A stretch of DNA of 64,000 bases from Octopus sinensis. Lineage: Eukaryota. The position numbers and the translations under genes are program-made. The stretch covers positions 104,222,001-104,286,000 of the forward strand of contig NC_042997.1 in NCBI RefSeq assembly GCF_006345805.1, read 5' to 3'. Of this stretch, positions 760 to 61,162 are shown piece by piece. The notes under the pieces are model-generated. The model was not told the DNA's origin. It made no database searches and saw only the letters and a program-made list of their open reading frames with translations. Positions within the stretch are counted from its first letter, which is position 1, and every line of letters begins with the position of its first letter.

Positions 760-1152
760 AGGAGTGGCTGTGTGGTAAGTAGCTTGCTAACCAACCACAT
801 GGTTCCGGGTTCAGTCCCAATGCGTGGCATCTTGGGCAAGTGTCTTCTGCTATAGCCCCGGGCCGACCAATGCCTTGTGAGTGGATTTGGTAGATGGAAA
901 CTGAAAGAAGCCTGTCGTATATATGTATATATATATATGTGTGTGTGTGTTTGTGTTTGTCCCCCTAGCATTGCTTGACAACTGATGCTGGTGTGTTTAC
1001 GTCCCCGTCACTTAGCGGTTCGGCAAAAAAGAGACCGATAGAATAAGTACTGGGCTTACAAAGAATAAGTCCCGGGGTCGATTTGTTCGACTAAAGGCGG
1101 TGCTCCAGCATGGCTGCAGTCAAATGACTGAAACAAGTAAAAGAGAGAGAGA
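760..1152 (+). mobile_element. SINE family A, full length (tRNA-derived head, TA/TG microsatellite linker, 3-prime body)
   Basis: A-box-like TGGCTGTGTGGT, B-box-like GGTTCAGTCC, tail CAGCATGGCTGCAGTCAAATGACTGAAACAAGTAAAAGAG. More than 15 related copies occur in the window. It resembles abundant octopus SINEs, but I cannot assign a family name (OK/OR1/OR2/Twitch). Confidence 0.9.
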
Positions 1153-3939: not shown

Positions 3940-4374
3940 TATATATATAATATATAATATATATTATAATATATATATATTATTTTATTATTTTTATTTT
4001 TTTATCAGTTTCAGCCATGAGCTGTGGCCATGCTGGGCCGCCATCTGGTGTTGCTACATGGTTTTACTTCACGAATGCTTTTTAGCAACTGCCATTTGTG
4101 CATGAGAGAGAGAGTTCGATGAGCTGCCCTCATCTGCACCTCCTGCCGTATGTATGCATATGTATGTGTGTATTTACGTGTCTGTGTTGGTCCCCACAAC
4201 ATCGCTTGACAACCGATGGTGGTGTGTTTACGTCCACGTAACTTAGCGGTTCGGCAAAAGACACCGACAGATTAAGTACTAGGCTTACAAAGAATAAGTC
4301 CTGGGATCGACTTGCTCGACTAAAGGCGGTGCTCCAGCATGGCCACAGTCAAATGACTGAAACAAGTAAGAGAG
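3721..4374 (+). mobile_element. SINE family A with a small head deletion, interrupted in its linker by another repeat
   Basis: 5-prime half at 3721-3870 and 3-prime half at about 4150-4374 match 760-1152. Confidence 0.85.
4005..4147 (-). mobile_element. Fragment of a different SINE-like repeat nested in the family A linker
   Basis: Reverse complement ends CCCAGCATGGCCACAGCTCATGGCTGAAACTGA, an A-like tail, but its body differs from family A. Confidence 0.55.
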
Positions 4375-11849: not shown

Positions 11850-12256
11850 CTGCAAGAAGGAATGAAAAGTTTCAGGTACCTTAACAAAACAAAAACCAAC
11901 CAAGGCAGGGTTTAATATCCTTTTACCACGAAACATAAATATATAAGACAATGTATCTGGTTTTAGCGATTATTCGTTATATCAACTATCGTTCTATTTC
12001 ACATCATTGTATTTCAGCAAACTTCAATGAAGGAATAATGAAAGTAAGTCGTTTAATAAAAAATGCAGAAACATCTTAATAGGTGATAAAAGGAGCTAAA
12101 ACCCGAATAAAAAGACATAGAGTTAATAACAATATCATTACCGATATCAATAACTGTAAACAAGGAAACTTACAAAAAATATCATATCTTACCAACAACA
12201 GTAAAACTAAAATTTACAGTTGTAATAACTATGGTAACCATACTGCAAAATTAATA

Positions 12257-12421
12257 GGCGCAGGAGTGGCTGTGTGGTAAGTAGCTTGTTTATCAACCAC
12301 ATGGTTCCGGATTCAGTCCCACTGCGTGGCACCTTGGGCAAGTGTCTTCTACTATAGCCTCGGACCGACCAAAGCCTTGTGAGTGGATTTGGTAGACGGA
12401 AACTGAAAGAAGCCCGTCGTA

Positions 12422-12454
<33 letters not shown>

Positions 12455-12905: not shown

Positions 12906-13342
12906 TAGAAATTAAAATTATCTATAGATATTGACTTATGACTACCCTACGTAGTTCTTATTGCATTAAATGTTTTATAATCGTGTTAGTGTAATAAAGA
13001 ATTCTTCGCTATTCGACAACTGGAATATGAATGTCTATAGAATTGATATATATTTTGTTAAATTTAAGGTCATACTCAACCTTTGGTGAAATTTTATTTT
13101 TGTTAAAACCGGACCCTAATTTAATCCTAGTGGAATACACACAAAAATTTGTCGGGAGTAGACATGTTTTAGATAACTTGCTAGTATCCGACAAGTTTAG
13201 TCATTCCTCAAAATAGTCCATTGATATGACCATAAGGATGTAATGTGAGCCAAAACGATTAGCTACACATAATTCAAGTTTCTTTTATATGATATGTATT
13301 CCAGCAAAAAAAAACCTCTCAAGTTAATGATAGAATATGTAC

Positions 13343-14099
13343 AGACTGAGGACCTTTACCTTCTGACCGACAGATTTGAAAAATAATTTTTTGTAACAAA
13401 ACACTTTCAAACTTCGGACACTGGTAGAACGTGTCGTATAAAACATCTTTTACTCTTAGCGTTTTGAGAAAAGCTTATATTTAGGAAGTTATTTCACGTT
13501 AAAGTTGTAGTATTTCGGTAATTTTAACCAACCAATGACGTGTATTCAGGTGTATAAAATTACTGCCGTTGTTTGTCAACAACAACTATCGGCGGTGGAT
13601 TTTTCGCTTGTCACTTTTATTTATGACATCGTGCATGCGTTTGTACTAGTTTTAGCTTTAAGGTTTTAGGGTTAGGGTTAGGGTTTTAGGGTTAAGGTGT
13701 GAGGGTTATGATTTTAGTGTTAGAGCTAGGGTTAAGTCTTTAGGGTTAGGGTTTTAAGGTTAGGGTTAGGGTTTTAGGGTTAAGGTTAAGGTTTTAGGGT
13801 TAGGGTTAGGGTTGTCATAAATAACAGCGACAAACGAAATATACACCGCCGGAAGTTCTTGCTGACAAGCAACAACAGTAATTTTATTTAGCTGAATACA
13901 CGTCATTGATTAATTGAAACTACCGAAATAGGACAACTTTAACGTGAAATTACTTCGTAAATGGAAACTTTTCGCAAAAGCGCTATGGGTAAAAGATGTT
14001 TTATATGACACATTCTACCAGTGTCCGAAGTTTGAAAGTGTTTAGTTACTAAAAAGTATTTTATTAAATCTGTCGATCAAAAGGTAAAGATCCCAGACT
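13343..14099. mobile_element. Fold-back/MITE-like element with about 286-bp inverted arms around a telomere-like core
   Basis: 13343-13628 aligns end to end with the reverse complement of 13813-14099. The core is degenerate (TTAGGG)n. Confidence 0.9.
13650..13812 (+). repeat. Interstitial telomeric-like repeat (TTAGGG with TTTTAGGG and TTAAGG variants)
   Basis: Read directly from the sequence. Confidence 0.9.
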
Positions 14100-14119
14100 T
14101 AACTTGTTTAGTTTGCCAC

Positions 14120-25128: not shown

Positions 25129-25349
25129 GGTTTCAAATTTTAGCAAATGGCCAGCAATTTTAGCGGTGGGGTAAGTCAATAATACCGCCCCTTGTGTTAA
25201 ACTGGTGCTATTTTTTTTATCGACCCCAGTGCTAAATTGGGACTGTTTTTATCTAGCGACCACGAAATGATGAAAGCCAAAGTCGACCAGAACATAGACG
25301 GACGAAATGCTGCTAAGCATTCTGCCTGCTCGTCGTGTTTAGTCGATCG
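25129..25349 (-). mobile_element. SINE family B with a 16-bp TSD
   Basis: Flanked by TCGATTGATTAATAAT at 25113-25128 and 25350-25365. Confidence 0.75.
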
Positions 25350-25365
25350 TCGATTGATTAATAAT

Positions 25366-26480
25366 ACTGAGATAAATGCCGCAGTGGTGATGAACATGCC
25401 TAACTACTCTGAAAAATTGGCAAGTCTTATAAGTGATGGTAGCTACAGCAAAGAAAAGAAAGATCCAACTCTGAAAATAGAGAGGAAGTTGTCACAGATC
25501 TTGATCAAAAACCAGGATCACTTTACACCAATGAAGTACAGACAACTGACTCAACACTACAGTAAACTACCACACAACTACGGTCTCCTTAAGATTCACA
25601 AGGATGGTAATCCATTAAGATTCACAAGGATGGTATTCCATTAAGACCTATAGTAAGCTGTTGAGGTTCAGCATGTCATCCACTAAGCCGCTTCCTTGTG
25701 GATATAATCAGTCCATGAGCAGGAAAGTCAACATCGTACGTGAAGAATTCCACCCACTTCACAGAATTGATCAAGGATACTCCCATTGAATCCAACCAGA
25801 TGGTGAATCTAGATGTGATAGGTTTGTTCACCAAAGTCCCAACTGGTGAAGCACTATCGGTGATTCAAGAAAAACTAGTGACAGGCACCCATCTAAAAGA
25901 ACGCACTAGTATATCAACAAGAAACTTGATGGAAATGTTGACCTGTGTAAAAACTACCTACTTCAGTCTGGACACTGATATATGTCGACAAAAAGAGGGT
26001 TTAGCTATGGGTTCGCCATTATCACCGATAATAGCCAATATATACATAGAATACTTTGAGAATTTGGCTTTACGATCAACACCACTAAAACCAACCCTAT
26101 GGCTGCGATGTGTTGATGACACCTTTATACTCTGGCCCCACCAGGAAGATTTCAAGTGCTGTTTGATCATGTGAACTCAATAAAGCCATCCAAACAGTTC
26201 ACAATGGAAAAGGAAAAAGACAATCAGCTAGCATTCTTGAACGTATTAATAAAACGCACCAAGTATGGATCCAGGACATCCGTATACCGCAAGCCGACCT
26301 TCACTGGACGATACCTCAATTTCAATTCCTACCATCCATACAGTGTAAAGAGAGGGACTGTTCAGTACCTAAAATATCGTGCAAAGAATATAAGTAGCGA
26401 TCGGATACACACCACGAAGAAATGATCAAGCTCAGTAACAATCTATTAAGCAACAACTACCCCAAAAATATTCCAATTAT
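25366..26480 (+). pseudogene. Penelope-like element reverse transcriptase remnant (GIY-YIG domain not seen)
   Basis: YGLLKIHKDGIPLRPIVS, LDVIGLFTKVP, GLAMGSPLSPIIANIYIE, WLRCVDDTF and VYRKPTFTGRYLNFNSYHP are typical PLE RT motifs. The frame carries stops and frameshifts. Confidence 0.92.
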
Positions 26481-28196: not shown

Positions 28197-28617
28197 TCAC
28201 TGACTGAAGAGTGACTTTGCTTACCTTACTACGGTTTGGACGCGTTTTCTTCCCGGTAAGAGTTTTGCTGTGTTGTTAATATTACTTCGTACCATCTGGA
28301 ACTTGTTGAATTTTACTACTGAAAATTTGTTGTTGAACTGTCTTGTTCCCCGGTTTTACCGGGGAATAATTGGATAATTTGTTACTGTTGAACTGTTAGC
28401 CATTGTGGCTTTTTTATCTACGTGACTGTATATAGTCTTTCCAGACTATCTTCGTGCCCCTCCCCCGAATGGGGGTGGGAATTAAACCTAATTTTTGAAC
28501 TGCTTTTTACCACTCATTGAACTGCTTTGGAAGAAAAACTTTTTATAGGTTTCCCAATTTTGTGGGAAACCAATATTTGTATTTTTTGTGTTGTCTATTA
28601 CTAATTTCAACAGAATA

Positions 28618-30031
28618 ATGTCTTTTGAGATTATCCACGAAAATAGTGCTCTAGAGGAAAGCAATGTTGATAACTGCAGTAAAAAATTTTCGGCGGTAGC
28701 CGCAGTGGCAACCGAGAACATTGACATTAATGTCAATCAGCTCGTCGAGCTATTTAAAAGAATGAAAGAGGAGGGTGGTGATGCTAAAATATCACCCTCC
28801 GCCAGTATCGTGGAGACCGAGAAGCGGACCGTAGTGTTTAAAACCTTCTGTCCACAAAGCAGAAGGTTCAAACACTTTGAAAAGAATACTATCGAGAAAT
28901 GCCTGTCCCCGATTTGGAAGGACATTGTGCACGTCGCCAGGGGACGGGCATATGGCACTGTGGAGGTCCGCTTCTCGGGGGAAGAGGTGGCCCGCGGGCA
29001 TTCTGTGAATCCCCTAAAAACCAGGAGGTGGTACTTCTGCCAACCTATAAGGGACGCAGGGCGTCCCGGGTCCGGATTGCAGAAGCACCGTCGGAAGTAG
29101 ATCCTGTAGAGGTAGTGGCCGCCCAGTTATATAAAAGGACAGACAAAATTAATATATTACAGGTAACATGCTCTGTCCCTCAATATTGGCTTGGGCGAGA
29201 CATTAATGTAATAATTCAAGGAACACAGGAGACCTGCAGGTCCTTCCTGAGAGGGTGCTCGTGGGCGAGAATGTTGCCCTCAGGGTACAGATCGAAGGCC
29301 GAAAACCCACCTGTTACGCCTGCAGCAAAAAGGGCCACATTCGTATAGACTGTCCAGACAAGCAAAATAAACCGCAGACTCCAGGCCCCTCAGATAATAA
29401 AAAAATCCCTACCCTTGCAAACTCACCTACCCCTACAAAAAACAAAAAGTCCCACTTCTGCTGTTACGGTGCCAACCCCAAAACAAACTGACAAAAAAAC
29501 CCAGCCCTTGCACTCACCAACCCCTACATTATTAAAACTTCCCATCCCCTTAAAAACTGCGGCGCCTACTGAACAAAATATTGCTACCCCAGACTATACC
29601 ATGGAGGTATCAGAGTGGGGATTTACAACAGTTCGTAAAAGAACTCGTGCATCATCCCCGTTAACATCCCCTACAAAAAATAATAAAAACAAAGACACAC
29701 CACAGACACCAAAAAAAAAAAATCCCGCCCAACTGGCCCAGAAAAACAAGACAAAAAAAATGAACTCATATTAATTGAATATGATACACAAAAATATATA
29801 AACGATATTGTGGTTCCGCATCACACAGCAAGACTGTACAACAAACACAAAGATCGAAACGAAAGATGTGCGTGGATTGCGGAAATAACGTTCAAACAAT
29901 TAAAAGACAAACACCCAAACGCCATCCGGCGTATCGCGAACTTGCCGGACTATCTGAAGAAGGAGGAGAAAGAAGGGGCCCACAAATGTGTGGTGAGGTC
30001 GGCCCCAACCTCTCCAACGAAATGTAAGTAG
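28618..30031 (+). pseudogene. LINE ORF1 (gag-like), frameshifted
   Basis: Begins MSFEIIHENSALEES, contains the zinc knuckle CYACSKKGHIRIDC, then a P/T/K-rich linker. Split across several ORFs in the track. Confidence 0.85.
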
Positions 30032-30048
30032 AACTTTTACATTTTGTA

Positions 30049-33000
30049 ATGGGTTCTCTTAACCTTGGTTGTTTAAATATGCGTGGTCTGAGTTCGAAGT
30101 GGAAGCAGGCTTGTTTCCTCGACGACCTCAGATCACATGATATACATGTGATGGTTGCTACAGAGACCAAGCTGGACAGCCTACAAACTTTCTCGCCTCT
30201 CCTGAATGGCTACGAGAAAATCATGCCTCCTGGCCAGACCGGAGGGCGAGGGGTTGTAGTGGTACTGATCCGTAAAGACTTGGCTCTGCAGACAAGTACA
30301 GTCTATGTGGACCCAGAAGGTGGGCTGGTCGTCCTTGATGTGACATACAGCAGTAAGGCCTTCAGGTTGATCGGACTCTAGGCACCTTGTGCTAGAGGTT
30401 TCCAAACTGATTTTTATCGGCGCTTAGAGGGCTTTCTCGTGACGTCGAAGACTTTAGTGGTATTAGGGGACTTTAATGCTATCGTTGCCGTACACATCGA
30501 TAGCGTTGACTCGATCCATAGGAAAGTGAATTCACGTCTCGTGGATCTGCTTAAGCGGTTTCAGCTGGCAGATCGTTACAGACTTGACCATCCGAACGTC
30601 CCAGAGTGGACCTGGATGAGTGGCGACGGAAGGTTCAAGTCTTATCTAGACAGGATAGTGATAAGAACTAGAGATAAGTCTAGTTTTAGTTGTCCACAGC
30701 TCGTCCAGGTGCCCTATACTGACCATAGAATGGTCAAGTGTAGACTGGACATAGATAGCACACTTAAGATAGGAACCGGCTACTGGAAGCTGAACAAGTC
30801 TATTTTGACTCGCGAGGCATACCGTAGCCGGTTTAAGGAGTTAGTGCAGAGGGCGTTAACCGGAGCCGTGGTTAATAAACGGTGGTGGTTCGCCCTCAAA
30901 AGAGCCATTCGATTCGAGTCCATTAGATTTAGTAAACCACTAAGAATAGATAGGGCTAGAATAGAAGGGCAACTAGTTAAGAACTTAGAGGAGGCGTTGA
31001 GGTTGGGCTCTGCATCTCATATTTTAGCGGCGAGAACGGCAATAGACCGTCACCTCAAAACCAAACATGAGGGATGTAGAGTTCGGGCTAAAGTACGAGC
31101 ATTGGGCCGTGAGGGAATTAATGTTGCCGGATGGGCCCGTACGATAGAAACACAGCGTGGCAACGATGCTACAATTGAGTCTCTTGTTGATGAAAACGGA
31201 TGCACGGTCAAGAAGCGGGACGAGATGTGTGAGGCACTTCACAAGCACTTCGCCGAGTTGTTCGGGAGGAGCGGGACGCTGGATTATGGTGAAGCCCTTA
31301 GGGACTTCCTGTCTTGTGGCCCGCGTCTCTAGACACGAGAGGCTGAGTGCTGTGAAGGGCCAATCACAGCCGAGGAAGTAATCGAGGTGTTGGGCAAGTG
31401 CCCTGGGGAGAAGTCGCCGGGTCTCGATGGTCTGCCCTATGAATTTTATAAAAGTATGCCAGACTTGTTCGGGCACCTGCTGGCTAGCGTCTACGCCAAC
31501 TGGCAGCAGAATGGGAGAATTCCCAAGTCTGCGAGCCGGGGTGGGGGGGTGACGTTGATCAGGAAGGACCCGAGCAAGGGGGACGAGATAGGGAAATTCA
31601 GGCCCATAACTCTGCTGAACACAGAGTTAAAGATTCTGGCCAAGGTGCTAGCAAAAAGGTTGGGGCGGGTCGTGGACAAACTTGTCGGGGAAGCGCAAAC
31701 GTGCGCTATCCCTGGCAGAACGATCCACGATAATCTCCGCCTTATACGCTACTCCTTAGAGAGGGTGGGGAAGCTTTCTGGCGCAGGGGGAGCACTGGTA
31801 CATTTAGACCAGTCCAAAGCATTTGAAAGGGTCGACCATCGGTACTTGGCGGCGGTCCTCGGAGAGGCTGGCCTAGGCCCGACCTTTCGAGGTTGAATCG
31901 CTGCTTTGTATAGCGACATCGAGTCTGTAGTCAAGGTGAACGGTTTCTTTTCGAAGCCGTTCAGGATCAAGCGTTCAGTTCGTCAGGGGTGTCCCCTGTC
32001 CTCGCTCCTATACGTATTGGCTCTTGAGCCTTTGCTGCGGAAGTTGGAGGCACTAGGGAGGGCGCCGCATGATCTATGGTGTGGAATAGGAGCTACGGCG
32101 TATGCGATGACACCTCCATCATCGTGGCAGATGAAGGCCTGCTTCCAGTGGTGGAAGAGGCCATCAAAAGCTACGAGGCGGTGGCAGGAGCAAAGGTTAA
32201 CAAGGACAAGTCGGTCGGTTTGCAACTCGGCACCTGGAGGGATTAGTCGATGCCGTCCAATAACGTCGTGGGGCGTTGGACAGAAGGTCCTGTTAAGCTG
32301 CTCGGGGTCTGGATTGGCCCAGACCTCCAGATAGAGAAAAATTGGAGTGACGTTGCCAGCAAGGTGACCGCTTTAACCCAGACCTGGTCTGGGCGGGCGT
32401 TATCTCTGCCAGGGAAAGCGGAGGTGGTGCAGATGTTTATAGCATCCAGTAATCACCTACCGTCTGACCGTGGTGCCTTGCCCCGATTTGTGTCTGAACA
32501 AGTTGGAGAGAATCCTTTTCCGCTTTTTGTGGAAAGGAAGAAAGCCACTTGTAAAGCGCTCTGTCTGTTGCCAGAAACCGCTAAAGGGTGGGCTAGGGAT
32601 GACTTGGCTGAGGATGCGAAAACTCGCGTTAAGGTTGAGGCACCTCTGGCTTTACCTGGATGGAGAGCAGGTGTGGTCACCGCATGTCCAGTTCTACCTT
32701 CCCCAGTTAACATCCCTAACGGACATCGGTGCAAGGATCAAGCGGAAACCTAAACTGGGTGAATGGCATTTGGAGTGCCGTCAGGCGCTCCAGCTACTCT
32801 CTCGGGCGGGCAACGCCGGCAACAGGAGTTCCACCACGGATTTCTATAGTGGGTTAGTGGAACTTATGTCAGAAGATGCCTTAGGGAAAGCCCTGGGCTA
32901 CGATGAAGATCAGTTGGTCAACCTGTTCCGGAGGACGTTCGGGCCGGGGTATCTGGATAATTACCAGAAATCCCTGGCCTGGTAGTGTTTCCGTGCGGCT

Positions 33001-33453
33001 TTACCTGTTCGCAACAAGCTGTCAAGGCACAGAAGTGCCGTCTCACCGACATGCCCGTGATGCGAGCAGGATAGGGAAACCGTCTTGCACGCATACGTGG
33101 AGTGTCCGGAGTTATCGGAACTGATAGCTTTTGCCGAACAACTGTTGTCAATGATGGGAAGAGTACAGCAATCAGCTGAGTCTATCATCGAGATTGTGCC
33201 GCCTCCTTTCCTTAACAGGAAAAGAAAGGCTTGTTTTTTCTGTGTAGTAGCCATATTGAAAGAAACAGTATGAAAGACGCGCACGAAAGGTATAGTGACA
33301 GGTACCTTTGTCTCCGGCCAGGGGTTGATTAACCTTTTTAGTTACCACCTCAGTAGCAAAATCAGGCTGGAGAAGAGGTGTCTGTCACGAGATATGTTTG
33401 TGAAAATATGGAAGCCTGTGGCATGCAAGCTGAGTATGTTTGGCACCAGGTAA
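30049..33453 (+). pseudogene. LINE ORF2 (AP endonuclease + reverse transcriptase), disrupted
   Basis: LNMRGL, VATET, LGDFNA, SYLDRI, TDHRMV, SPGLDGLPYEFY, FRPITLLNTELKILAKVLA, DQSKAFERVDH, RQGCPLSSLLY, frameshifted AYADD, and ETVLHAYVEC. Confidence 0.93.
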
Positions 33454-33688: not shown

Positions 33689-34060
33689 TAGCTTGCTTAT
33701 GAACCACATGGTTCCGGGTTCAATCCCACTGCGTGGCACGTTCGGCAAGTGTCTTCTACTATAGCCTCGGACTAACGAAAGCCTTGTGAGTGGATTTGGT
33801 AGACGGAAACTGAAAGAAGCCTGTCGTATATATGTATACATGCATCTGTGTGAATATGTTTGTGTGTCTGTGTTTGTCCCCTCAACATCGCTTGACAAAT
33901 GATGCTGGTGTGTTTACGTCCCTGTAACTTAGCGGTTCGGCAAAAGAGACTGATAGAATAAGTACTAGGCTTACAAAGAATAAGTCCTGGGGTCGATTTG
34001 CTCGACTAAAGGTGGTGCTCCAGCATGGCCACAGTCATATAACTGAAACACGTAAAATAA
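33689..34060 (+). mobile_element. Remainder of the family A SINE split by the LINE
   Basis: TAGCTTGCTTATGAACCACATGGTTCCGGGTTCAATCCC...CAGCATGGCCACAGTC. Confidence 0.9.
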
Positions 34061-34439: not shown

Positions 34440-34880
34440 CTCCTCTCTTCATTTCACACCTACTTCCTCCCCTACCCATCACTCCTCTCCTCTCTTCCCT
34501 TGACACCTACTTTCTCTCTTTACTCCTACACACCTCTCCCTCAATGTTACCACCTCCACCCACACCCCACACCCACATCCCACCCCAACACACACATCCC
34601 ACTCGCACATACCCCAACCCTGCCCCCACATCCTCACAACAAACCCACACCCCACCCTCACATTCCCGTACCCTACCCTCGTATCCCCACACGCCAACAC
34701 CACCACATCACACTAAACCACACCACCACACCACATCACAACACTCCGCATACACTAGTACTGACCAGTTCCCATCACCTACACCATCATCCACACACCC
34801 ACACATTACAGACGCACACACTTACACACACAAACATCCACACGCCAGAGTCACCAACCCCTGTCCACACACACGCACAC
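34440..34880. repeat. C/A-rich low-complexity tract
   Basis: Direct reading. Source of the His/Pro/Thr-rich pseudo-ORFs. Confidence 0.8.
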
Positions 34881-44070: not shown

Positions 44071-44168
44071 ATTTAACACACAGGCAGACACATATACGTT
44101 TATATATATATACACACATATATATATATATGTATATATACATGTATGTATGTATGTATGTATGTATG

Positions 44169-44202
<34 letters not shown>

Positions 44203-44614
44203 TGTATGTATGTATGTATGTATGTATGTATGTATGTATGTATGTATGTGTGTATTATTGTACCTTGTATGTATGTGAATCGGTGAAAACCGGTGTGTGA
44301 GGTCTGAGTGCATTTACAAAAGATATATACTTGTATCCTTACAAAAGGTAAATGCATAAATGAAAACGATATTTTAACAAGAACGCGTGCTGAACAAAGT
44401 AAAAGATAAAGCGTAAAAGCTCATCTATTCAAAATAACACACACATACACGCACATTATACATATGTGTGTGTATATATATGTATGTATATATATATATT
44501 ATATATATAATATATATATATTATATATATATATATATATGTTTCTATGTATGTATGTATGTATGTATGTATGTATGTATGCATGTATGTATGTAGTATG
44601 TATGTATATATATA

Positions 44615-44665
<51 letters not shown>

Positions 44666-45607
44666 AAAAAAACATGAAAGAAAAGAAAGAAAACGCATTA
44701 AATTTTGATTAGAAAAACAAGAAGCCTTATAAGATTTGGAGCTTCAGTGTAGACGCTATGATTTTAAATGAAGATAGCAAAATACACCAACTACTTTGGA
44801 AGCTAACTATTGTGATTTAAACACCTACAGTGCAGTGTGAGAAGGAGAGGGTAGAGTTAGAGAAAAGAAAAGCAAAAGAAACCGAATTGACAGATTTTAG
44901 ATGGGGATTGTTTGGCTCCTTTGGAATTATAGATGAAATGAATAAATAAGGTTAAAAGAGAAACAGTTATAAAAATAAGTAGATAAACAACAGATTTATC
45001 TTGATGTTGGAATGTACTAACAAATGACAATAGTCGAGGAAGTTGTTTCAACAACATTAAAAGCATACAGACTTGCACACGTACATACATACATAGATAC
45101 ATACATACATACATACATACATACATACATACATACATACATACATACATACATACATACATACATACATACATACATACATACATACATACATACATAC
45201 ATGCGTATATATATATATATACATACATATATATATACACGCATGAATTTTTAAAGCAAGAGGGGAAAAATATTTAATGAAAGAGTATACTGAAGGACAC
45301 GGGAATAATGATGACTAAAAAGAATTAAAAGGAAAAATTACTGTAACTGCTTTAAAAATTGCTAAGTATTTTGTTTTGTTTTTAATTAGAGAAAAAAAAT
45401 ACAGCAAATGACTGTCAATCGATAAGGAAAAACAAAAAGCAGTGGAGGAAAGGAACGAAAAGAAATTAACACACGCACACAAACACACATACGTACACAC
45501 ACATTCTCTCTGTCTGTCTGTCTATCGCTCTCTCACGCACACATACATACATCTACGCACATCCGCAAACACACACCACATACATCTACATATACGCAAA
45601 TGCGTAA

Positions 45608-45651: not shown

Positions 45652-46036
45652 CTGTGTGGTAAGTAGCTTGCTTACGAACCCCATGGTTCTGGGTTCATTT
45701 CCTCTGCGTGGCACCTTGTGCAAGTGTCTTCTACTATAGCCTCGAGCCGACCAAAGCCTTGTGAGTGGATTTGGTAGACGGAAACTGAAAGAAGTCTGTC
45801 GCATATCTGTATATATATATATTTGCGTGTATATGTTTGTGTGTCTGTGTTTGTCCCTCCAATCGCTCTACAACAGATGCTGGTGTGTTTACGTCCCCGT
45901 AACTTAGTGGTTCGGCAAAAGAGACTGATAGAATAAGTACTAGGCTTACAAAGAATAAGTCATGGGGTCGATTTGCTCGACTAAAGGCGGTGCTCCAGCA
46001 TGGCCACAGTGAAATGACTGAAACAAGTAAAAGAGA

Positions 46037-46959: not shown

Positions 46960-48129
46960 TAGCATTAAAGACCCGTCGTTGCCGGGTCATAGTGCTTGTG
47001 CATGTGTATATGTGTACATATTACATGTACATCTATATATATACATCTACACATAAAATACTAAATACAAAGTTATATCTTGATATCGCTAGTGATAACA
47101 ATACTCAAAATATATAACAGACTGGAATTGTTAGCCCGTCTCTTGTAATTTCGATCAATTGTATCTTGTCCTCCCTCTTGTATAGAAGTGTGTCTACAAT
47201 CCAGCCTAACTCTACTTCTGGGAGGGGGGGGGGGCATTTAAAATTTTTTTCCGGGACGTCCTACGTCCCAGATGTGGAGGTAAAGATAAAATATTTCCAC
47301 TTTGCAAGCTCGAGTCGAGTACTCCCTTGCACGCTCCGTTAACTCGAACCTTGCTTCTATTGTGGCGAATTTACCGCCTCTGATTAGATATCTTTCATGG
47401 TCGCACCAAGACATTTTCGAAGGTGCTTTCCTCCATGTGTTCAAATCTTCTTTTTTCTCTACATTGTATACTTTATAGACAATAGTCTTTTCTTTAATTT
47501 AAATTTTTATTATCCATCTCGACTATTCCATTTCTGCACGCTAATTTTATTTTTAATTTATTCCCATTCATGTGGAACCACTTATTCAAGTTCAAGTCAT
47601 TGATGCAATTTTATACCAATTGCTATTTTTACTTTTGTTATGTTACGATTATATTATAGTTTGATTTTAATTATTACATACTACATATAATTCAATTGTT
47701 ATTATTATTTTTATTGTTAAAGTGAAAGTATCTGACATAAAATAGAGAAATGTTTTTGTTTCACTTTTAACACGTAATACTGAAATAGTGGAGAAGATAT
47801 GATATTGCTATGGGCTCGTTCTAGGCAAGAAGTTGAACATTTTTTCCCATGGAACTACATGGACCCTAAGTAAGGCATGTGTAAAATTTGAATGAAATTG
47901 GTTGTGTAGTTTTCAAGTTTTAGGGAATCGTAGTGGAGAAGATATGATATTGCTGTGGGCTCGCCTTGGCAAAAAGTTAAAAAAAATTTTTGCCGATGAC
48001 ACTCTCCGGACCGTAAGTAAGGCATGTGTAAAATTTGAATGAAATTGGTTGCGTAGTTCTCAAGTTTTAGGGAAACACACAGACAGACAGACAGACAGAC
48101 ACATATTCTCAGTTTTATATATATAAAGA
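46959..48129 (-). mobile_element. Non-autonomous Helitron (1171 bp)
   Basis: The minus strand starts A|TCTTTATATATATAAAACTGAG and ends with a GACCCG-GCAACGA-CGGGTC hairpin + TTTAATG + CTAG|T. Internal 145-bp tandem duplication (units start 47786 and 47931). Confidence 0.85.
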
Positions 48130-48575: not shown

Positions 48576-49451
48576 CGTGGTCTGATCAATAAATATCCGG
48601 ACTGTTGCCATAACAACGAACTTAAAACACGCAGAGTAAAGCCGCTTGGCACAAATTGACCATGAACTTAGTTGTAGCGCACTAAGATTTAACGTTATAG
48701 GTTTCTTCTGCTGTTCACAGTAGTGTCTGCAAGGAAGGTGTGTAGCCTGTGATTGTCGTATTGACGATGACGGAGAAGGTTGAGCAGAGAATCTGCATCA
48801 AATTTTATCAAAATCTTGGCGATACCTGCTCAGCGGCCTACACAAAGTTACCAAAAATTTTTCGTCATCCTTGACAAAAAGAGGATCGTGTGCAACTGAA
48901 ACCCGAGTGTCTCTTTGAACAGCTGAAAGCGGTTTTGGGAGATGTGCGTCTCATACCAAAATCTTCAGTGATAATGAACTGAACTGAACCGTAACTAATC
49001 TGCACCTCTTCTAATAACTCATGGATGGTGATTCGACGATTTCTCCTCACAGGTGCACGCACAACTGCGATGTTTTTCTTAGTTCTGCTGGTTGCGGATC
49101 TCCTAGAACTTTCGTCAATATCCACATTTTTGGCCATCTTGGAAACGTCTGAACCACTCATACACTTGTGAGCTGCTCATACACTACTCTTCATACACTT
49201 TCTGCAACTTTGCATAGGCCTCTGAGCAGGTTTCACTATGACAACTTTCTCTGTCATGGTGAATGCGACGATCACATGCTACGCACCTTCCTGCCAAACA
49301 CTGCTGTTAACAGCATAGGTAAGCTAGAACGTTAACGCTTTGTGCACAAGCACAGCAAAGTGCGAAGTCAATCTTTCCCAAGCAGCTTCACTCTGCATAC
49401 TTTAGCTTCGTTAAATTCGCAACAGTCCAGATATTTATTGATCAGACCTCG
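48576..49451. mobile_element. Rearranged mariner: two 5-prime ends joined in inverted orientation
   Basis: TIR CG(T/A)GGTCTGATCAATAAATATC(C/T)GGACTGTTGC at both ends. The plus arm encodes MTEKVEQRICIKFYQNLGDTCS. The minus arm encodes MTEKV...VYEWFRRFQDG...RRNRRITIHELLEEVQISYGSVQ. Confidence 0.88.
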
Positions 49452-54466: not shown

Positions 54467-54542
<76 letters not shown>

Positions 54543-54714
54543 CATATATACGACGGGCTTCTTTCAGTTTCCCTCTACCTAATCCACTCACAAGGCTTTG
54601 GTCGGCCCGAGGCTATAGTAAAAGACACTTGCCCAAGGTGCCACGCAGTGGGACTGAACCCAGAATCATGTGGTTGGTAAGCAAGCTACATACCACACAG
54701 CCACTCCTACGCCT
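54338..54714 (-). mobile_element. SINE family A with an internal deletion at a GCC microhomology
   Basis: Intact head (CCACACAGCCACTCCTACGCC as reverse complement) and junction GACTATGGCC-GAACCGCTAAG. Confidence 0.88.
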
Positions 54715-55386
54715 ACATGCTCATTTTCTTGACTGTTTTATATTAATTTTTATTAGGCGACATATACAAATGTTTAAATTGCAATGAAATATCTAACGAA
54801 AAATAAAGTTCAGTTCTATAGTTTTCAACATGTAAACCTAAATTACATTTTGTTTTGTAGTATGTATTTATGAAGAATATGAACGATCGAGTGGTTAGAG
54901 ATGCATATTACTTGAAAACGAATAGACAGATCGGATGTTCGGATGTTCGAATCGCAAAATTGATCTCCATATGTGGCCCTAAACATTTAATTTCCAAACG
55001 TTTCTGTTCATGTAACAAATAATGTTACCATAGAATTGTGGTAAGCTGATTTTCAAGTCAGATTCAGTTCTGTTACTATTAGTTTAAGCCCTCTAACCGA
55101 GCGATCTCTTTTATCAACGCGATTTCATTCATGACCATCCCGTCTCATTTATGGTTTTCAGAAATACACTATCGAATGAAACATTTTATTATACAAGATG
55201 GCCACGGTATTTCAGTATTTGTGCGTGTATGTGCGCATATGCGTCTGCGTGAGTGCGCGCGCGCGTGTAATGCATACCTACGGTGGCTAATGTACAATTG
55301 ACTAAAATATTTTTTAATTGGCATATCATGCAAATTAGACATGTTACAATTCTAATAACACTTATTCCTGCTTTTCTTCATTGCAG

Positions 55387-59757: not shown

Positions 59758-61162
59758 TTTAGGGCTGGTTCGACAGTTTCAAGAAGAGGACTGGTGTTCA
59801 TAGCGTCGTCAGTTATGGAGAAACAAAAAGTTCTGACACAAAGTCAGCTGAGGATTTAGTGCGTGGATTCCGTCAGCTCATAGCAGCTGAGGGGTATGTC
59901 ACACAACAGGCATTCAACTATGATGAAATTGGCCTTTTGCGGGGAAAAATTGCCCAGAAGAACCTACATGACTGCAGAGGAGAAGAAATTGCCAGACCAC
60001 AAGCCTATGAAAGATAATTCTCGCTCTTTGTGCTAATACGAGTGGGGTCTTGAAGATTAAGCTACTCCCTGTCTATCATTCCGAAAACCCACGAGCGTTC
60101 AAGTCACACAAAATTTTGAAGGAGAAGCTGCAGTTAATGTGGAAAGCAAACGATAAAGCTTGGGCCACAGGCAGCTCTTCACCGAGTGGGTCAACCTTAT
60201 CTTCTGACCAGTAGTGAAAAAGTAAATTCTGGAGAAGGATCTTCCTCTCAAGGTCCCTCTCATCCTCGGCGATGCTCCTACTCACGCCCCTAACTTGGAT
60301 GAATTTTAATTTATAAAAGTTCTATACCTTTCACGCAGCATTACCTCTGTCTTGCAGCCCTTGGACCAACAAGTGATTTCTAATTTTAAGAAATTGTACA
60401 TCAAACACCTGTTTTGTCGGTGCTTTTAAGTCACCGAAAATACAAATCGTGAATTTTGGAAGGAGCACTAAAACAGTTTTTTGTTTCGCCCTTATCAAGC
60501 CTAGCCAGGCTCTTGGGCCCGGTTTCCCGGTGTCTGTGGCGCATGTGTTCCCCCCAGCTTGACGCAGCGTTACTCAAGAAACAGAAAGAGAGAGTGAGAG
60601 AAAGCTGTGGCGAAAGAGTACAACGGGTGTCGGTACCACCCCCTGCCAGAGCATCGTGGAGATTTTAGGTGTTTTCGTTCAATAAACACACACAACGCTC
60701 GGTCTGGGAATCGAAACCGCGATCCTCCGACTACGAGTCCGTGCCCTAACCACTGGGCCATTGTGCCTTCACACTAAAAGTGTTAACTGTATGAAAATCA
60801 TCAATATGGCCTGGCAGGATATAACGAGGAGAAAACTGAATTCTGCGTGGTGAAAACTGTGGTCTTACTGCGTATCCGACAACAGATGAACTCCTGCAGC
60901 TTCAAGAGCAGCAGCATTCGGATGTGGTGGAAGAGATTGGTTCTTCGGAGGAGGACATTGTAGTAAAAAAGGCTATCTCTAGGAGGACAGTGTAGCAGAA
61001 AAGGCTATCTCTACAAGATGACGGAAAGAGTTATATATATAAGGATTAATTATATTTTGATTAATTTCAATTGCAATGGCAAAAATTGATTTGTTGAACG
61101 AGTAAATTGTAAAACGAGCACGGTCATGGAATGAATTAAACTCGTACTGCGTGGTATCACTG
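59758..61162 (+). pseudogene. Tigger/pogo (TIGD1-like) DDE transposase remnant with right TIR, 5-prime truncated
   Basis: GWFDSFKKRTG, FNYDEIGL, PRRTYMTAEEKKLPDHKPMKD, VYHSENPRAFK, LGDAPTH, LQPLDQQVISNFKKLY. Right end CTCGTACTGCGTGGTATCACTG|TA. Confidence 0.92.
60474..60771 (-). mobile_element. SINE family F inserted in the Tigger element
   Basis: Minus strand TGGCCCAGTGGTT (A box) and GTTTCGATTCC (B box). TSD CACTAAAA at 60466-60473 and 60772-60779. Confidence 0.85.

What the first reader, a model, noticed from the sequence alone, without database searches (positions are those of the whole stretch)
13343..14099. Fold-back element that encloses telomeric TTAGGG repeats
Two about 286-bp inverted arms enclose about 165 bp of one-directional degenerate TTAGGG, the telomere motif of many metazoans including molluscs. 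Each arm also has a CAATGACGTG (CRE-like) site. It looks like a non-autonomous transposon that disperses interstitial telomeric sequence, which can form cruciform or G4 structures and might recruit telomere proteins. I cannot resolve a TSD or assign a superfamily.
Basis: partly seen in the sequence, partly recalled or inferred. Interest (0 to 1): 0.72.

Follow-up and report, generated by a model that had tools for sequence, protein, structure and literature searches.

The report
Decayed octopus fold-back transposon, telomere-like core
This is one old, non-coding copy of a long-inverted-repeat DNA transposon in an octopus-like genome, with a short telomere-like repeat array at its centre; it is a curiosity of an ordinary kind unless other copies prove to carry the same core.

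Summary
Two inverted arms of about 280 bp (13350-13628 and 13814-14093) are 85.8% identical. They enclose 185 bp: 18 nt of unique sequence and about 167 bp of G-strand-only telomere-like repeats.

I add two points. First, the arms are flanked directly by an 8-bp direct repeat, CAGACTGA / CAGACTTA (chance about 0.002). Second, the core is a 20-bp minisatellite (TTTTAGGG-TTAGGG-TTAGGG, 95-96% in its outer parts), not a simple degenerate hexamer array.

The host is an octopod; the best named match is Octopus bimaculoides. The element has no coding capacity, no Rfam match and no sub-repeats within the arms. The CRE-like site occurs at chance frequency.

Best reading: a decayed non-autonomous cut-and-paste transposon of the 8-bp-duplication class, most like Mutator/fold-back elements. 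The telomeric core at the hairpin tip is probably a break-repair filler that later expanded.

Copy number, core retention in other copies, an autonomous partner and Repbase/Dfam status could not be tested. No tool here holds octopus genomes as searchable DNA. Interest is modest.

The parts
13342..13349 (.). Left copy of the putative 8-bp target-site duplication, CAGACTGA
   Evidence: It abuts the first base of the inverted repeat and matches 14094-14101 at 7 of 8 positions. The chance of 7/8 or better at a fixed pair of positions in this window is 0.002.
13350..13628 (+). Left inverted arm (long terminal inverted repeat); terminus GGACCTTTACCTTCTGACCGACAG
   Evidence: blastn E 8e-88 against the right arm. 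There are no internal sub-repeats beyond chance.
13629..13646 (+). 18-nt unique spacer (TCGTGCATGCGTTTGTAC), probably a remnant of the original hairpin loop
   Evidence: It has no partner in the right arm and is not telomere-like.
13647..13813 (+). Telomere-derived minisatellite, G-rich strand on +, true unit 20 bp (TTTTAGGG TTAGGG TTAGGG). The outer blocks 13658-13697 and 13739-13813 are well kept; the middle 13698-13738 is degenerate.
   Evidence: TRF gives period 20 with the best score, 147. The outer blocks are 95.0% and 95.9% identical to the 20-bp unit without gaps, against 85-88% with gaps to the hexamer. Composition is T64 G60 A31 C2.
13669..13691 (+). The only canonical G-quadruplex motif (four G3 tracts, loops of 7 or fewer) in the element
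   Evidence: Regex scan. There are two such starts on the + strand of the whole window.
13814..14093 (-). Right inverted arm; terminus (reverse complement) GGATCTTTACCTTTTGATCGACAG
   Evidence: The terminal 28-mer pattern matches only these two sites in the window.
14094..14101 (.). Right copy of the putative 8-bp target-site duplication, CAGACTTA
13533..13542 (+).
   Evidence: TGACGTG occurs 7 times against 4.5 expected, and 20 of 100 shuffles reach 7. TGACGTCA is absent.

Best explanation
The feature is one old, inert copy of a non-autonomous cut-and-paste DNA transposon with very long terminal inverted repeats (fold-back-like), in an octopod genome.

Inferred mechanism. A transposase supplied in trans bound the GGAYCTTTACC... 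termini, excised the 744-bp unit and inserted it at a staggered 8-bp cut. Repair of that cut produced the CAGACTKA duplication. An 8-bp duplication with TIRs over 100 bp and a heterogeneous middle fits Mutator-like/fold-back elements best. hAT, P and Merlin are not excluded.

The telomere-like array sits exactly at the centre of symmetry. I take it to be filler from double-strand-break repair at the hairpin tip or at an internal-deletion junction, made either by telomerase extension or by capture of telomeric DNA. It was later reshaped and expanded by slippage in 20-bp units.

Whether that happened in this copy or in the family's founder cannot be told from one copy. The copy is now decayed: the arms are 14% diverged and the duplication has 1 mismatch in 8.
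For: Shown:
- The inverted repeat is sharp-edged, E 8e-88.
- An 8-bp direct repeat, 7/8 identical, lies exactly at both edges of the inverted repeat, p about 0.002. The flanks do not continue the inverted repeat in register.
- The longest stop-free stretch is 52 codons, with no Pfam family and no Rfam match.
- The predicted single-stranded DNA hairpin is -205.7 kcal/mol against -66.7 +/- 5.0 for shuffles, with the whole core as the loop.
- The array is one-directional and has 20-bp periodicity.
- The outer parts of the array are about 4-5% from their unit consensus, similar to the roughly 7-8% per-arm divergence.

From the literature:
- MULEs typically have TIRs over 100 bp, 8-10 bp duplications and variable internal sequence. 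Aedes MULE families make 8-9 bp duplications (PMC5225508).
- Most fold-back elements are assigned to Mutator, with duplications of 8-10 bp (PMC4079207, PMC3169594).
- TIRs within one Tm1 copy average 93% identity (PMC3169594).
- Short telomeric arrays are inserted at double-strand breaks, including inside repetitive elements (PMC2246262).
Against: Only one copy has been seen, so mobility rests on a single 7/8 duplication. No autonomous partner or transposase was found. The arms lack the subterminal tandem repeats common in fold-back elements and MULEs. The terminus GGAYC is not a signature I can assign to any superfamily. Telomerase makes plain hexamers, so the 6-6-8 unit needs extra steps (mutation, then 20-bp amplification). 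CAGACTG is a near-palindrome, so a TA duplication with imperfect CAG... termini (Tc1/mariner style) is an alternative parse.
Confidence: 0.6

Rival explanations
1. The TTAGGG-like core is a fixed part of a multi-copy transposon family, which therefore seeds interstitial telomeric arrays across the octopus genome, with possible structural or protein-binding effects.
For: The element has transposon hallmarks. The outer parts of the array are about as diverged as the arms, which is compatible with the array being present at insertion. Non-autonomous MULE or fold-back derivatives carry varied internal sequences that are then copied (PMC5225508, PMC4079207). Tandem-repeat-carrying MITEs are known in molluscs (PMC3879986).
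Against: No second copy was found in the window, in the 63 kb of fetched loci, or in any collection scanned. None of those collections holds octopus genomes as DNA, so this is absence of a test rather than a negative result. No other TTAGGG dimer occurs in the window or the loci. Nothing bears on protein recruitment.
Confidence: 0.25
2. The feature is not a transposon. It is a local inverted duplication formed around a pre-existing interstitial telomeric array, for example by replication template switching or fold-back repair at a hard-to-replicate G-rich tract.
For: It is single-copy in everything searched. The array lies exactly at the centre of symmetry. The flanks are unique sequence. Telomeric tracts are regarded as break-prone (PMC7215372).
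Against: Such events do not predict an 8-bp direct repeat at the outer edges of both arms, nor a sharply bounded 280-bp arm that returns at once to unique sequence.
Confidence: 0.12
3. The element is a Tc1/mariner-type non-autonomous element with a TA duplication and long inverted repeats, with termini TA|CAGACTGAGG... and ...CCCAGACT|TA.
For: TA is present on both sides if the termini are read as CAGACTGAGGACC and AGTCTGGGATC. A pogo/Tigger-type DDE_1 fragment lies in the same window at 60011-60211.
Against: This parse needs two indels and two mismatches in the first 13 terminal bases, whereas the 8-bp parse needs one mismatch. TA pairs are common by chance at 35% GC. There are no conserved direct repeats inside the arms, as IR-DR elements would have.
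Confidence: 0.08
4. The feature is either two independent insertions of one ~280-bp repeat in opposite orientation on either side of an older telomeric array, or an assembly artefact (chimeric palindromic read).
For: Neither can be formally excluded with one locus.
Against: Neither arm has its own flanking duplication, while the outer flanks match each other. No solo arm exists in the window or the loci. A read artefact would give near-identical arms, not 14% divergence with 4 gap columns.
Confidence: 0.04

Closest known systems
Mutator-like (MULE) non-autonomous elements and fold-back transposons (Drosophila FB, Tetris; Meloidogyne Tm1; Aedes Muta families)
   Same: The inverted repeats are long: 280 bp each, 75% of the element. 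It has an 8-bp duplication, no coding capacity and a variable middle domain that can hold tandem repeats. The TIRs within the copy are imperfect. (PMC5225508, PMC4079207, PMC3169594.)
   Different: The arms are unique sequence without the subterminal or internal tandem repeats usual in those elements. No MULE transposase partner or family is known here. The tandem repeats are telomere-like and lie only in the middle.
Short interstitial telomeric sequences inserted at double-strand breaks (Nergadze et al., PMC2246262; PMC7215372)
   Same: It is a short (<200 bp), one-directional TTAGGG-type array at an internal site inside a repetitive element. The array abuts host sequence directly, and a TAG lies in register at the 5' junction (13647-13649).
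   Different: The array is built from a 20-bp 6-6-8 unit rather than exact hexamers. No empty orthologous locus is available. The host is a mollusc, where this mechanism has not, to my knowledge, been documented.
Tandem-repeat-containing MITEs of bivalves (pearl, DTC84; PMC3879986) and Helentron-borne satellite arrays in oyster (PMC7492417)
   Same: It is a molluscan non-autonomous element whose centre is a short tandem array.
   Different: Those elements have short inverted repeats, an AA duplication, and core monomers with an adjoining microsatellite, or they are rolling-circle elements. Here the arms are 280 bp, the duplication is 8 bp, and the core is telomere-like with a 20-bp unit.
Telomere-bearing transposons of ciliates (Tetrahymena Tel-1, Cherry and Blackburn 1985, cited in PMC2831315; Oxytricha TBE, from my own knowledge)
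   Same: These are transposon-like elements physically joined to telomeric repeats at internal chromosomal sites.
   Different: There the telomeric repeats lie at the element ends, and they are tied to ciliate genome rearrangement. Here they are at the centre.

Membership tests
Non-autonomous TIR DNA transposon (MITE-like) | Terminal inverted repeats with sharp ends | tested here: met
   13350-13628 pairs with 13814-14093 at 85.8%, E 8e-88. Identity falls to background outside these ends.
Non-autonomous TIR DNA transposon (MITE-like) | Target-site duplication directly flanking the TIRs | tested here: met
   CAGACTGA / CAGACTTA match at 7 of 8 positions, chance 0.002. This rests on a single copy only.
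Non-autonomous TIR DNA transposon (MITE-like) | No transposase coding capacity; small size | tested here: met
   The element is 744 bp. The longest stop-free stretch is 52 codons, and there is no Pfam family at E below 0.01.
Non-autonomous TIR DNA transposon (MITE-like) | Multiple dispersed copies with different flanks | not testable with these tools
   There is one copy in the window and none in L001-L003. Metagenome, viral and prokaryote collections and the protein database gave nothing, but none of them holds octopus genomes as DNA.
Non-autonomous TIR DNA transposon (MITE-like) | Termini shared with an autonomous, transposase-encoding element | not testable with these tools
   The terminal 28-mer occurs only at the two ends of the element in the window and in none of the fetched loci.
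Mutator-like / fold-back elements | TIRs over 100 bp and a duplication of 8-10 bp (PMC5225508, PMC4079207, PMC3169594) | tested here: met
   The TIRs are 280 bp and the duplication is 8 bp.
Mutator-like / fold-back elements | Subterminal or internal tandem sub-repeats in the TIRs (usual, not universal) | tested here: not met
   TRF finds nothing in the arms. No 7-9-mer is repeated in both arms, and repeated k-mers are at shuffle level.
Mutator-like / fold-back elements | MULE (or other) transposase encoded by a related autonomous copy | not testable with these tools
   No octopus genome DNA is searchable by nucleotide sequence here.
hAT superfamily | 8-bp duplication with short TIRs ending in a YARNG-type motif (from my own knowledge of the superfamily) | tested here: inconclusive
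   The duplication length fits. The termini read GGACC / GGATC, which does not fit the motif, and the TIRs are far longer than usual.
Tc1/mariner superfamily | TA duplication and CAG... termini | tested here: inconclusive
   This is possible only with two indels in the terminal 13 bases, and the 8-bp parse is simpler.
Short ITS inserted at a double-strand break (PMC2246262) | One-directional array of exact hexamers at insertion, plus an empty ancestral or orthologous site | tested here: inconclusive
   The array is one-directional: 12 TTAGGG and 0 CCCTAA. Its best-fitting unit is 20 bp, not 6. No orthologous locus was obtainable.
Relic of head-to-head telomere fusion | (TTAGGG)n followed by (CCCTAA)n | tested here: not met
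   There is no CCCTAA in the core.
Penelope-like element / retrozyme terminal structure | Hammerhead ribozyme motif in the repeat | tested here: not met
   There is no Rfam match in 13343-14099 at E of 1 or below. There is no similarity to the RT-bearing fragment at 25.2-26.4 kb.
cAMP response element | Palindromic TGACGTCA, or enrichment of the half-site | tested here: not met
   TGACGTCA is absent. TGACGTG occurs 7 times against 4.5 expected.

The most novel reading that the evidence does not exclude
The element may belong to a multi-copy octopod family of long-TIR transposons whose master copy acquired a telomerase-made array at its hairpin tip. Transposition, rather than chromosome fusion or local break repair, would then be a main source of interstitial telomeric arrays in cephalopod genomes.
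Probability: 0.25. Interest if true: 0.6.

Novelty: new member of a known kind. Interest (0 to 1): 0.3.

Why it matters
Interstitial telomeric arrays are often read as scars of chromosome fusions or break repair. If they can also be carried by a transposon, interstitial telomere signals in cephalopod karyotypes would need a different reading. Such a family would also be a natural system for studying hairpin-tip breakage and telomerase healing. As it stands, this is one decayed copy of an ordinary class of element, so it mainly matters as an annotation: a fold-back-like MITE with an 8-bp duplication and a 20-bp telomere-derived minisatellite.

Tried and rejected
1. I translated every stop-free stretch of the arms, joined the pieces and searched the 5.8-billion-protein collection, hoping to catch spurious ORF calls on other copies. 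There were no hits at E of 1 or below.

2. I scanned for exact patterns from the best-conserved arm block and from the terminus. JGI metagenomes, IMG/VR and GTDB genomes gave nothing. This was expected, because none of them holds cephalopod genomes.

3. I fetched cephalopod DNA through TE proteins encoded in the window. L001 (Octopus bimaculoides, 20.7 kb) shares SINE-like repeats and the LINE with the window but has no arm copy. L002 and L003 (ENA ERZ21867824) share only the RT element at about 70-74%, so they come from another species. I stopped sampling because each look-up yields about 20 kb of a roughly Gb-scale genome.

4. Neither flank, nor the joined empty site, matches any other repeat, so there is no paralogous empty site.

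5. Rfam gave no ribozyme or other RNA family in the element.

6. There are no sub-repeats or transposase-binding-like direct repeats in the arms.

7. The CRE idea was rejected on frequency.

8. The bacterial promoter/terminator scan is not meaningful for a eukaryote and gave chance-level results.

9. A full-text search for strings from the arms or the 20-bp unit found nothing. No paper was found that describes an octopus element of this kind.

10. A TERC-retrotranscript origin for the 18-nt spacer was rejected. The spacer lies 5' of the G-strand array, whereas the structures described in PMC2246262 place the TERC-derived piece differently.

Full report
**What is there.** Two inverted arms pair at 85.4% over 281 alignment columns (blastn E 8e-88). 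A global alignment gives 241 identical, 22 transitions, 18 transversions and 4 gap columns, with a K2P distance of 0.16. The secure arm limits are 13350-13628 and 13814-14093.

Between the arms lie 185 bp. The first 18 nt are unique (TCGTGCATGCGTTTGTAC, 13629-13646). A telomere-like tract then runs to 13813 and abuts the right arm directly. The tract has 12 exact TTAGGG on the + strand and no CCCTAA, with composition T64 G60 A31 C2. All nine near-exact TTAGGG dimers of the 64-kb window lie in it, against 0.12 expected.

**Two refinements.**

First, the edges. The inverted repeat stops exactly at 13350 and 14093. The eight bases outside each edge form a direct repeat, CAGACTGA (13342-13349) and CAGACTTA (14094-14101), matching at 7 of 8 positions. 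Across this window the chance of 7/8 or better for a fixed pair of octamers is 0.002, whether the pairs are taken at the same spacing or at random.
- CAGACTG is nearly palindromic, so a second parse exists: a TA duplication with termini CAGACTGAGG... / AGTCTGGGAT.... It needs two indels in 13 bases, so I rank it lower.

Second, the core is not simply a degenerate hexamer array.
- TRF scores period 20 highest (147, against 93 for period 6).
- The two outer blocks (13658-13697 and 13739-13813) match (TTTTAGGG TTAGGG TTAGGG)n at 95.0% and 95.9% without gaps. They match (TTAGGG)n only at 85-88%, and with gaps.
- All five mismatches in those blocks are the same G-to-A change (TTAAGG).
- The middle 41 bp are much more degenerate (83%).

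The array therefore grew, at least in its last phase, by copying 20-bp units and not by direct telomerase synthesis.

**Host and surroundings.** The window is eukaryotic, 35% G+C and packed with microsatellites. It carries a frameshifted LINE with endonuclease and RT domains at about 28.5-33.3 kb, an RT fragment at 25.2-26.4 kb and a pogo-type DDE_1 fragment at 60.0-60.2 kb.

The LINE endonuclease ORF has as its best named relative an Octopus bimaculoides protein, at 81% identity. The locus of that protein (L001, CM046626.1) shares the LINE at 81.7% nucleotide identity and several SINE-like repeats at 79-87% with the window. The window therefore comes from an octopod, but I cannot name the species.

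The element is the only long non-microsatellite inverted repeat in the window. Its flanks are unique sequence.

**What it is not.**
- It has no coding capacity. The longest stop-free stretch is 52 codons, the mirrored ATG-led ORFs of the two arms differ at many residues, and Pfam gives nothing credible.
- No Rfam family matches, including hammerhead ribozymes, which argues against a Penelope-like or retrozyme terminal structure.
- It is not a head-to-head telomere fusion, because the repeats run one way only.
- It is not a read artefact, because the arms differ by 14% and by indels.
- It is not two independent insertions. Neither arm has its own flanking duplication, while the outer flanks match each other.
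- The CRE-like site is a half-site at chance frequency. It appears twice only because the arms are copies of each other.

**How it most likely works.** The anatomy is that of a non-autonomous cut-and-paste transposon: sharp long inverted repeats, a flanking 8-bp duplication, no genes and a heterogeneous middle.

The literature supports a Mutator-like or fold-back assignment:
- MULEs typically have TIRs over 100 bp, duplications of 8-10 bp and variable internal sequence. The Aedes MULE families make 8-9 bp duplications (PMC5225508).
- Fold-back elements are mostly assigned to Mutator, with duplications of 8-10 bp (PMC4079207; Tm1, PMC3169594).
- TIRs within one Tm1 copy average only 93% identity (PMC3169594), so the arms need not have been identical at insertion.

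I therefore infer that a transposase making 8-bp staggered cuts, most likely Mutator-like, mobilised this 744-bp unit in trans. hAT, P and Merlin also make 8-bp duplications (classification knowledge, not tested). The fit is imperfect, because the arms have none of the subterminal tandem repeats common in MULE and fold-back TIRs. I also cannot tie the GGAYC terminus to a superfamily. The insertion step is supported by the duplication. The identity of the enzyme is inference.

**The core.** As single-stranded DNA the element folds into a stem of about 280 bp, with the entire telomere-like tract as a 184-nt loop. The energy is -205.7 kcal/mol against -66.7 +/- 5.0 for shuffles, z = -28.

An array inserted at random into a roughly 580-bp palindromic element would rarely land in the loop of 25 nt or so. 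There are two non-exclusive reasons for the central position:
- Hairpin or cruciform tips are where breaks occur.
- Internal-deletion junctions of non-autonomous derivatives are where filler DNA is added.

In mammals, short telomeric arrays are known to be inserted during double-strand-break repair, including inside repetitive elements. The break end often carries microhomology in register with the array (PMC2246262, PMC7215372). Here a TAG in register precedes the first degenerate units (13647-13649).

My preferred account is that a broken 3' end at the centre was extended by telomerase, or captured telomeric DNA, and was rejoined to the right arm. The tract then acquired the TTTTAGGG variant and expanded by slippage in 20-bp units. 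All of this is inference.

The outer array blocks are 4-5% from their unit consensus, and the arms are 7-8% each from their common ancestor. The array is therefore not much younger than the arm divergence. This is compatible either with an event in the family's founder or with an early event in this copy.

**What could not be done.** All of them need nucleotide searches of octopus genomes or TE libraries, which are not available here.

I tried indirect routes:
- arm translations against the protein collection;
- exact patterns against metagenome, viral and prokaryote collections;
- sampling cephalopod loci through TE proteins;
- full-text searches for strings from the arms.

All were negative, and none is a fair test. 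'Single copy' is therefore untested, not shown.

**Comparison and novelty.** In behaviour the element resembles a long-TIR MULE/fold-back-type MITE. Its core resembles a break-repair interstitial telomeric sequence.
- It differs from bivalve tandem-repeat MITEs (pearl, DTC84), which have short inverted repeats and an AA duplication (PMC3879986).
- It differs from ciliate telomere-bearing elements, where the repeats lie at the ends (Cherry and Blackburn 1985, cited in PMC2831315).

I found no paper describing a telomere-cored fold-back element in cephalopods. The library is incomplete, and Repbase and Dfam were not searchable.

I rate it a new member of a known kind. A specialist would find one decayed MITE with an internal telomeric tract mildly interesting. 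It would become notable only if the family is numerous and keeps the core, to which I give about one chance in four.

**Verdict.** The transposon nature is strengthened by the 8-bp duplication. Dispersal of telomeric sequence, the CRE site and protein recruitment are unsupported. Interest 0.3.

Noticed in passing
window 25201-26422 (+); L002 8409-9758 (-) and 10001-11350 (+): This is an RT-bearing retroelement fragment (RVT_1). Its relatives in ENA assembly ERZ21867824 carry RVT_1 + HTH_animal + DUF8422. In L002 two identical 449-aa copies sit head-to-head about 240 bp apart. The motifs look Penelope-like to me (inference, not tested).
   Followed up: partly
window about 28500-33300 (+): This is a frameshifted LINE with Exo_endo_phos and RVT_1 domains. 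It is 81.7% identical over 2.4 kb to a copy on Octopus bimaculoides CM046626.1 (L001). That match is the basis for calling the host an octopod.
   Followed up: partly
window 60011-60211 (+), with 59763-60014 upstream: This is a fragment of a pogo/Tigger-type transposase (DDE_1, E 1e-9). A possible mariner-like helix-turn-helix fragment at 48868-49176 (-) was not confirmed by Pfam.
   Followed up: partly
window 918-1111, 4149-4340, 12254-12452, 33854-34026, 45810-46001, 54518-54715, 60577-60772 and others: A SINE-like repeat of about 190 bp is present in many copies, 79-87% identical to copies in the O. bimaculoides locus L001. The copies usually lie next to microsatellites.
   Followed up: no
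window 44092-44276 and 45058-45239: (TATG)n and (CATA)n arrays form an inverted microsatellite pair about 800 bp apart. This pair gives the longest inverted-repeat hits in the window.
   Followed up: no
window 47786-48074: This is a tandem duplication of a 147-bp unit (2.0 copies, 85% matches).
   Followed up: no
window 34559-34678: This is a C-rich 53-bp repeat (2.2 copies) with eight overlapping four-C-tract motifs, which would be G-quadruplex-capable on the minus strand. It is the only other such cluster in the window.
   Followed up: no
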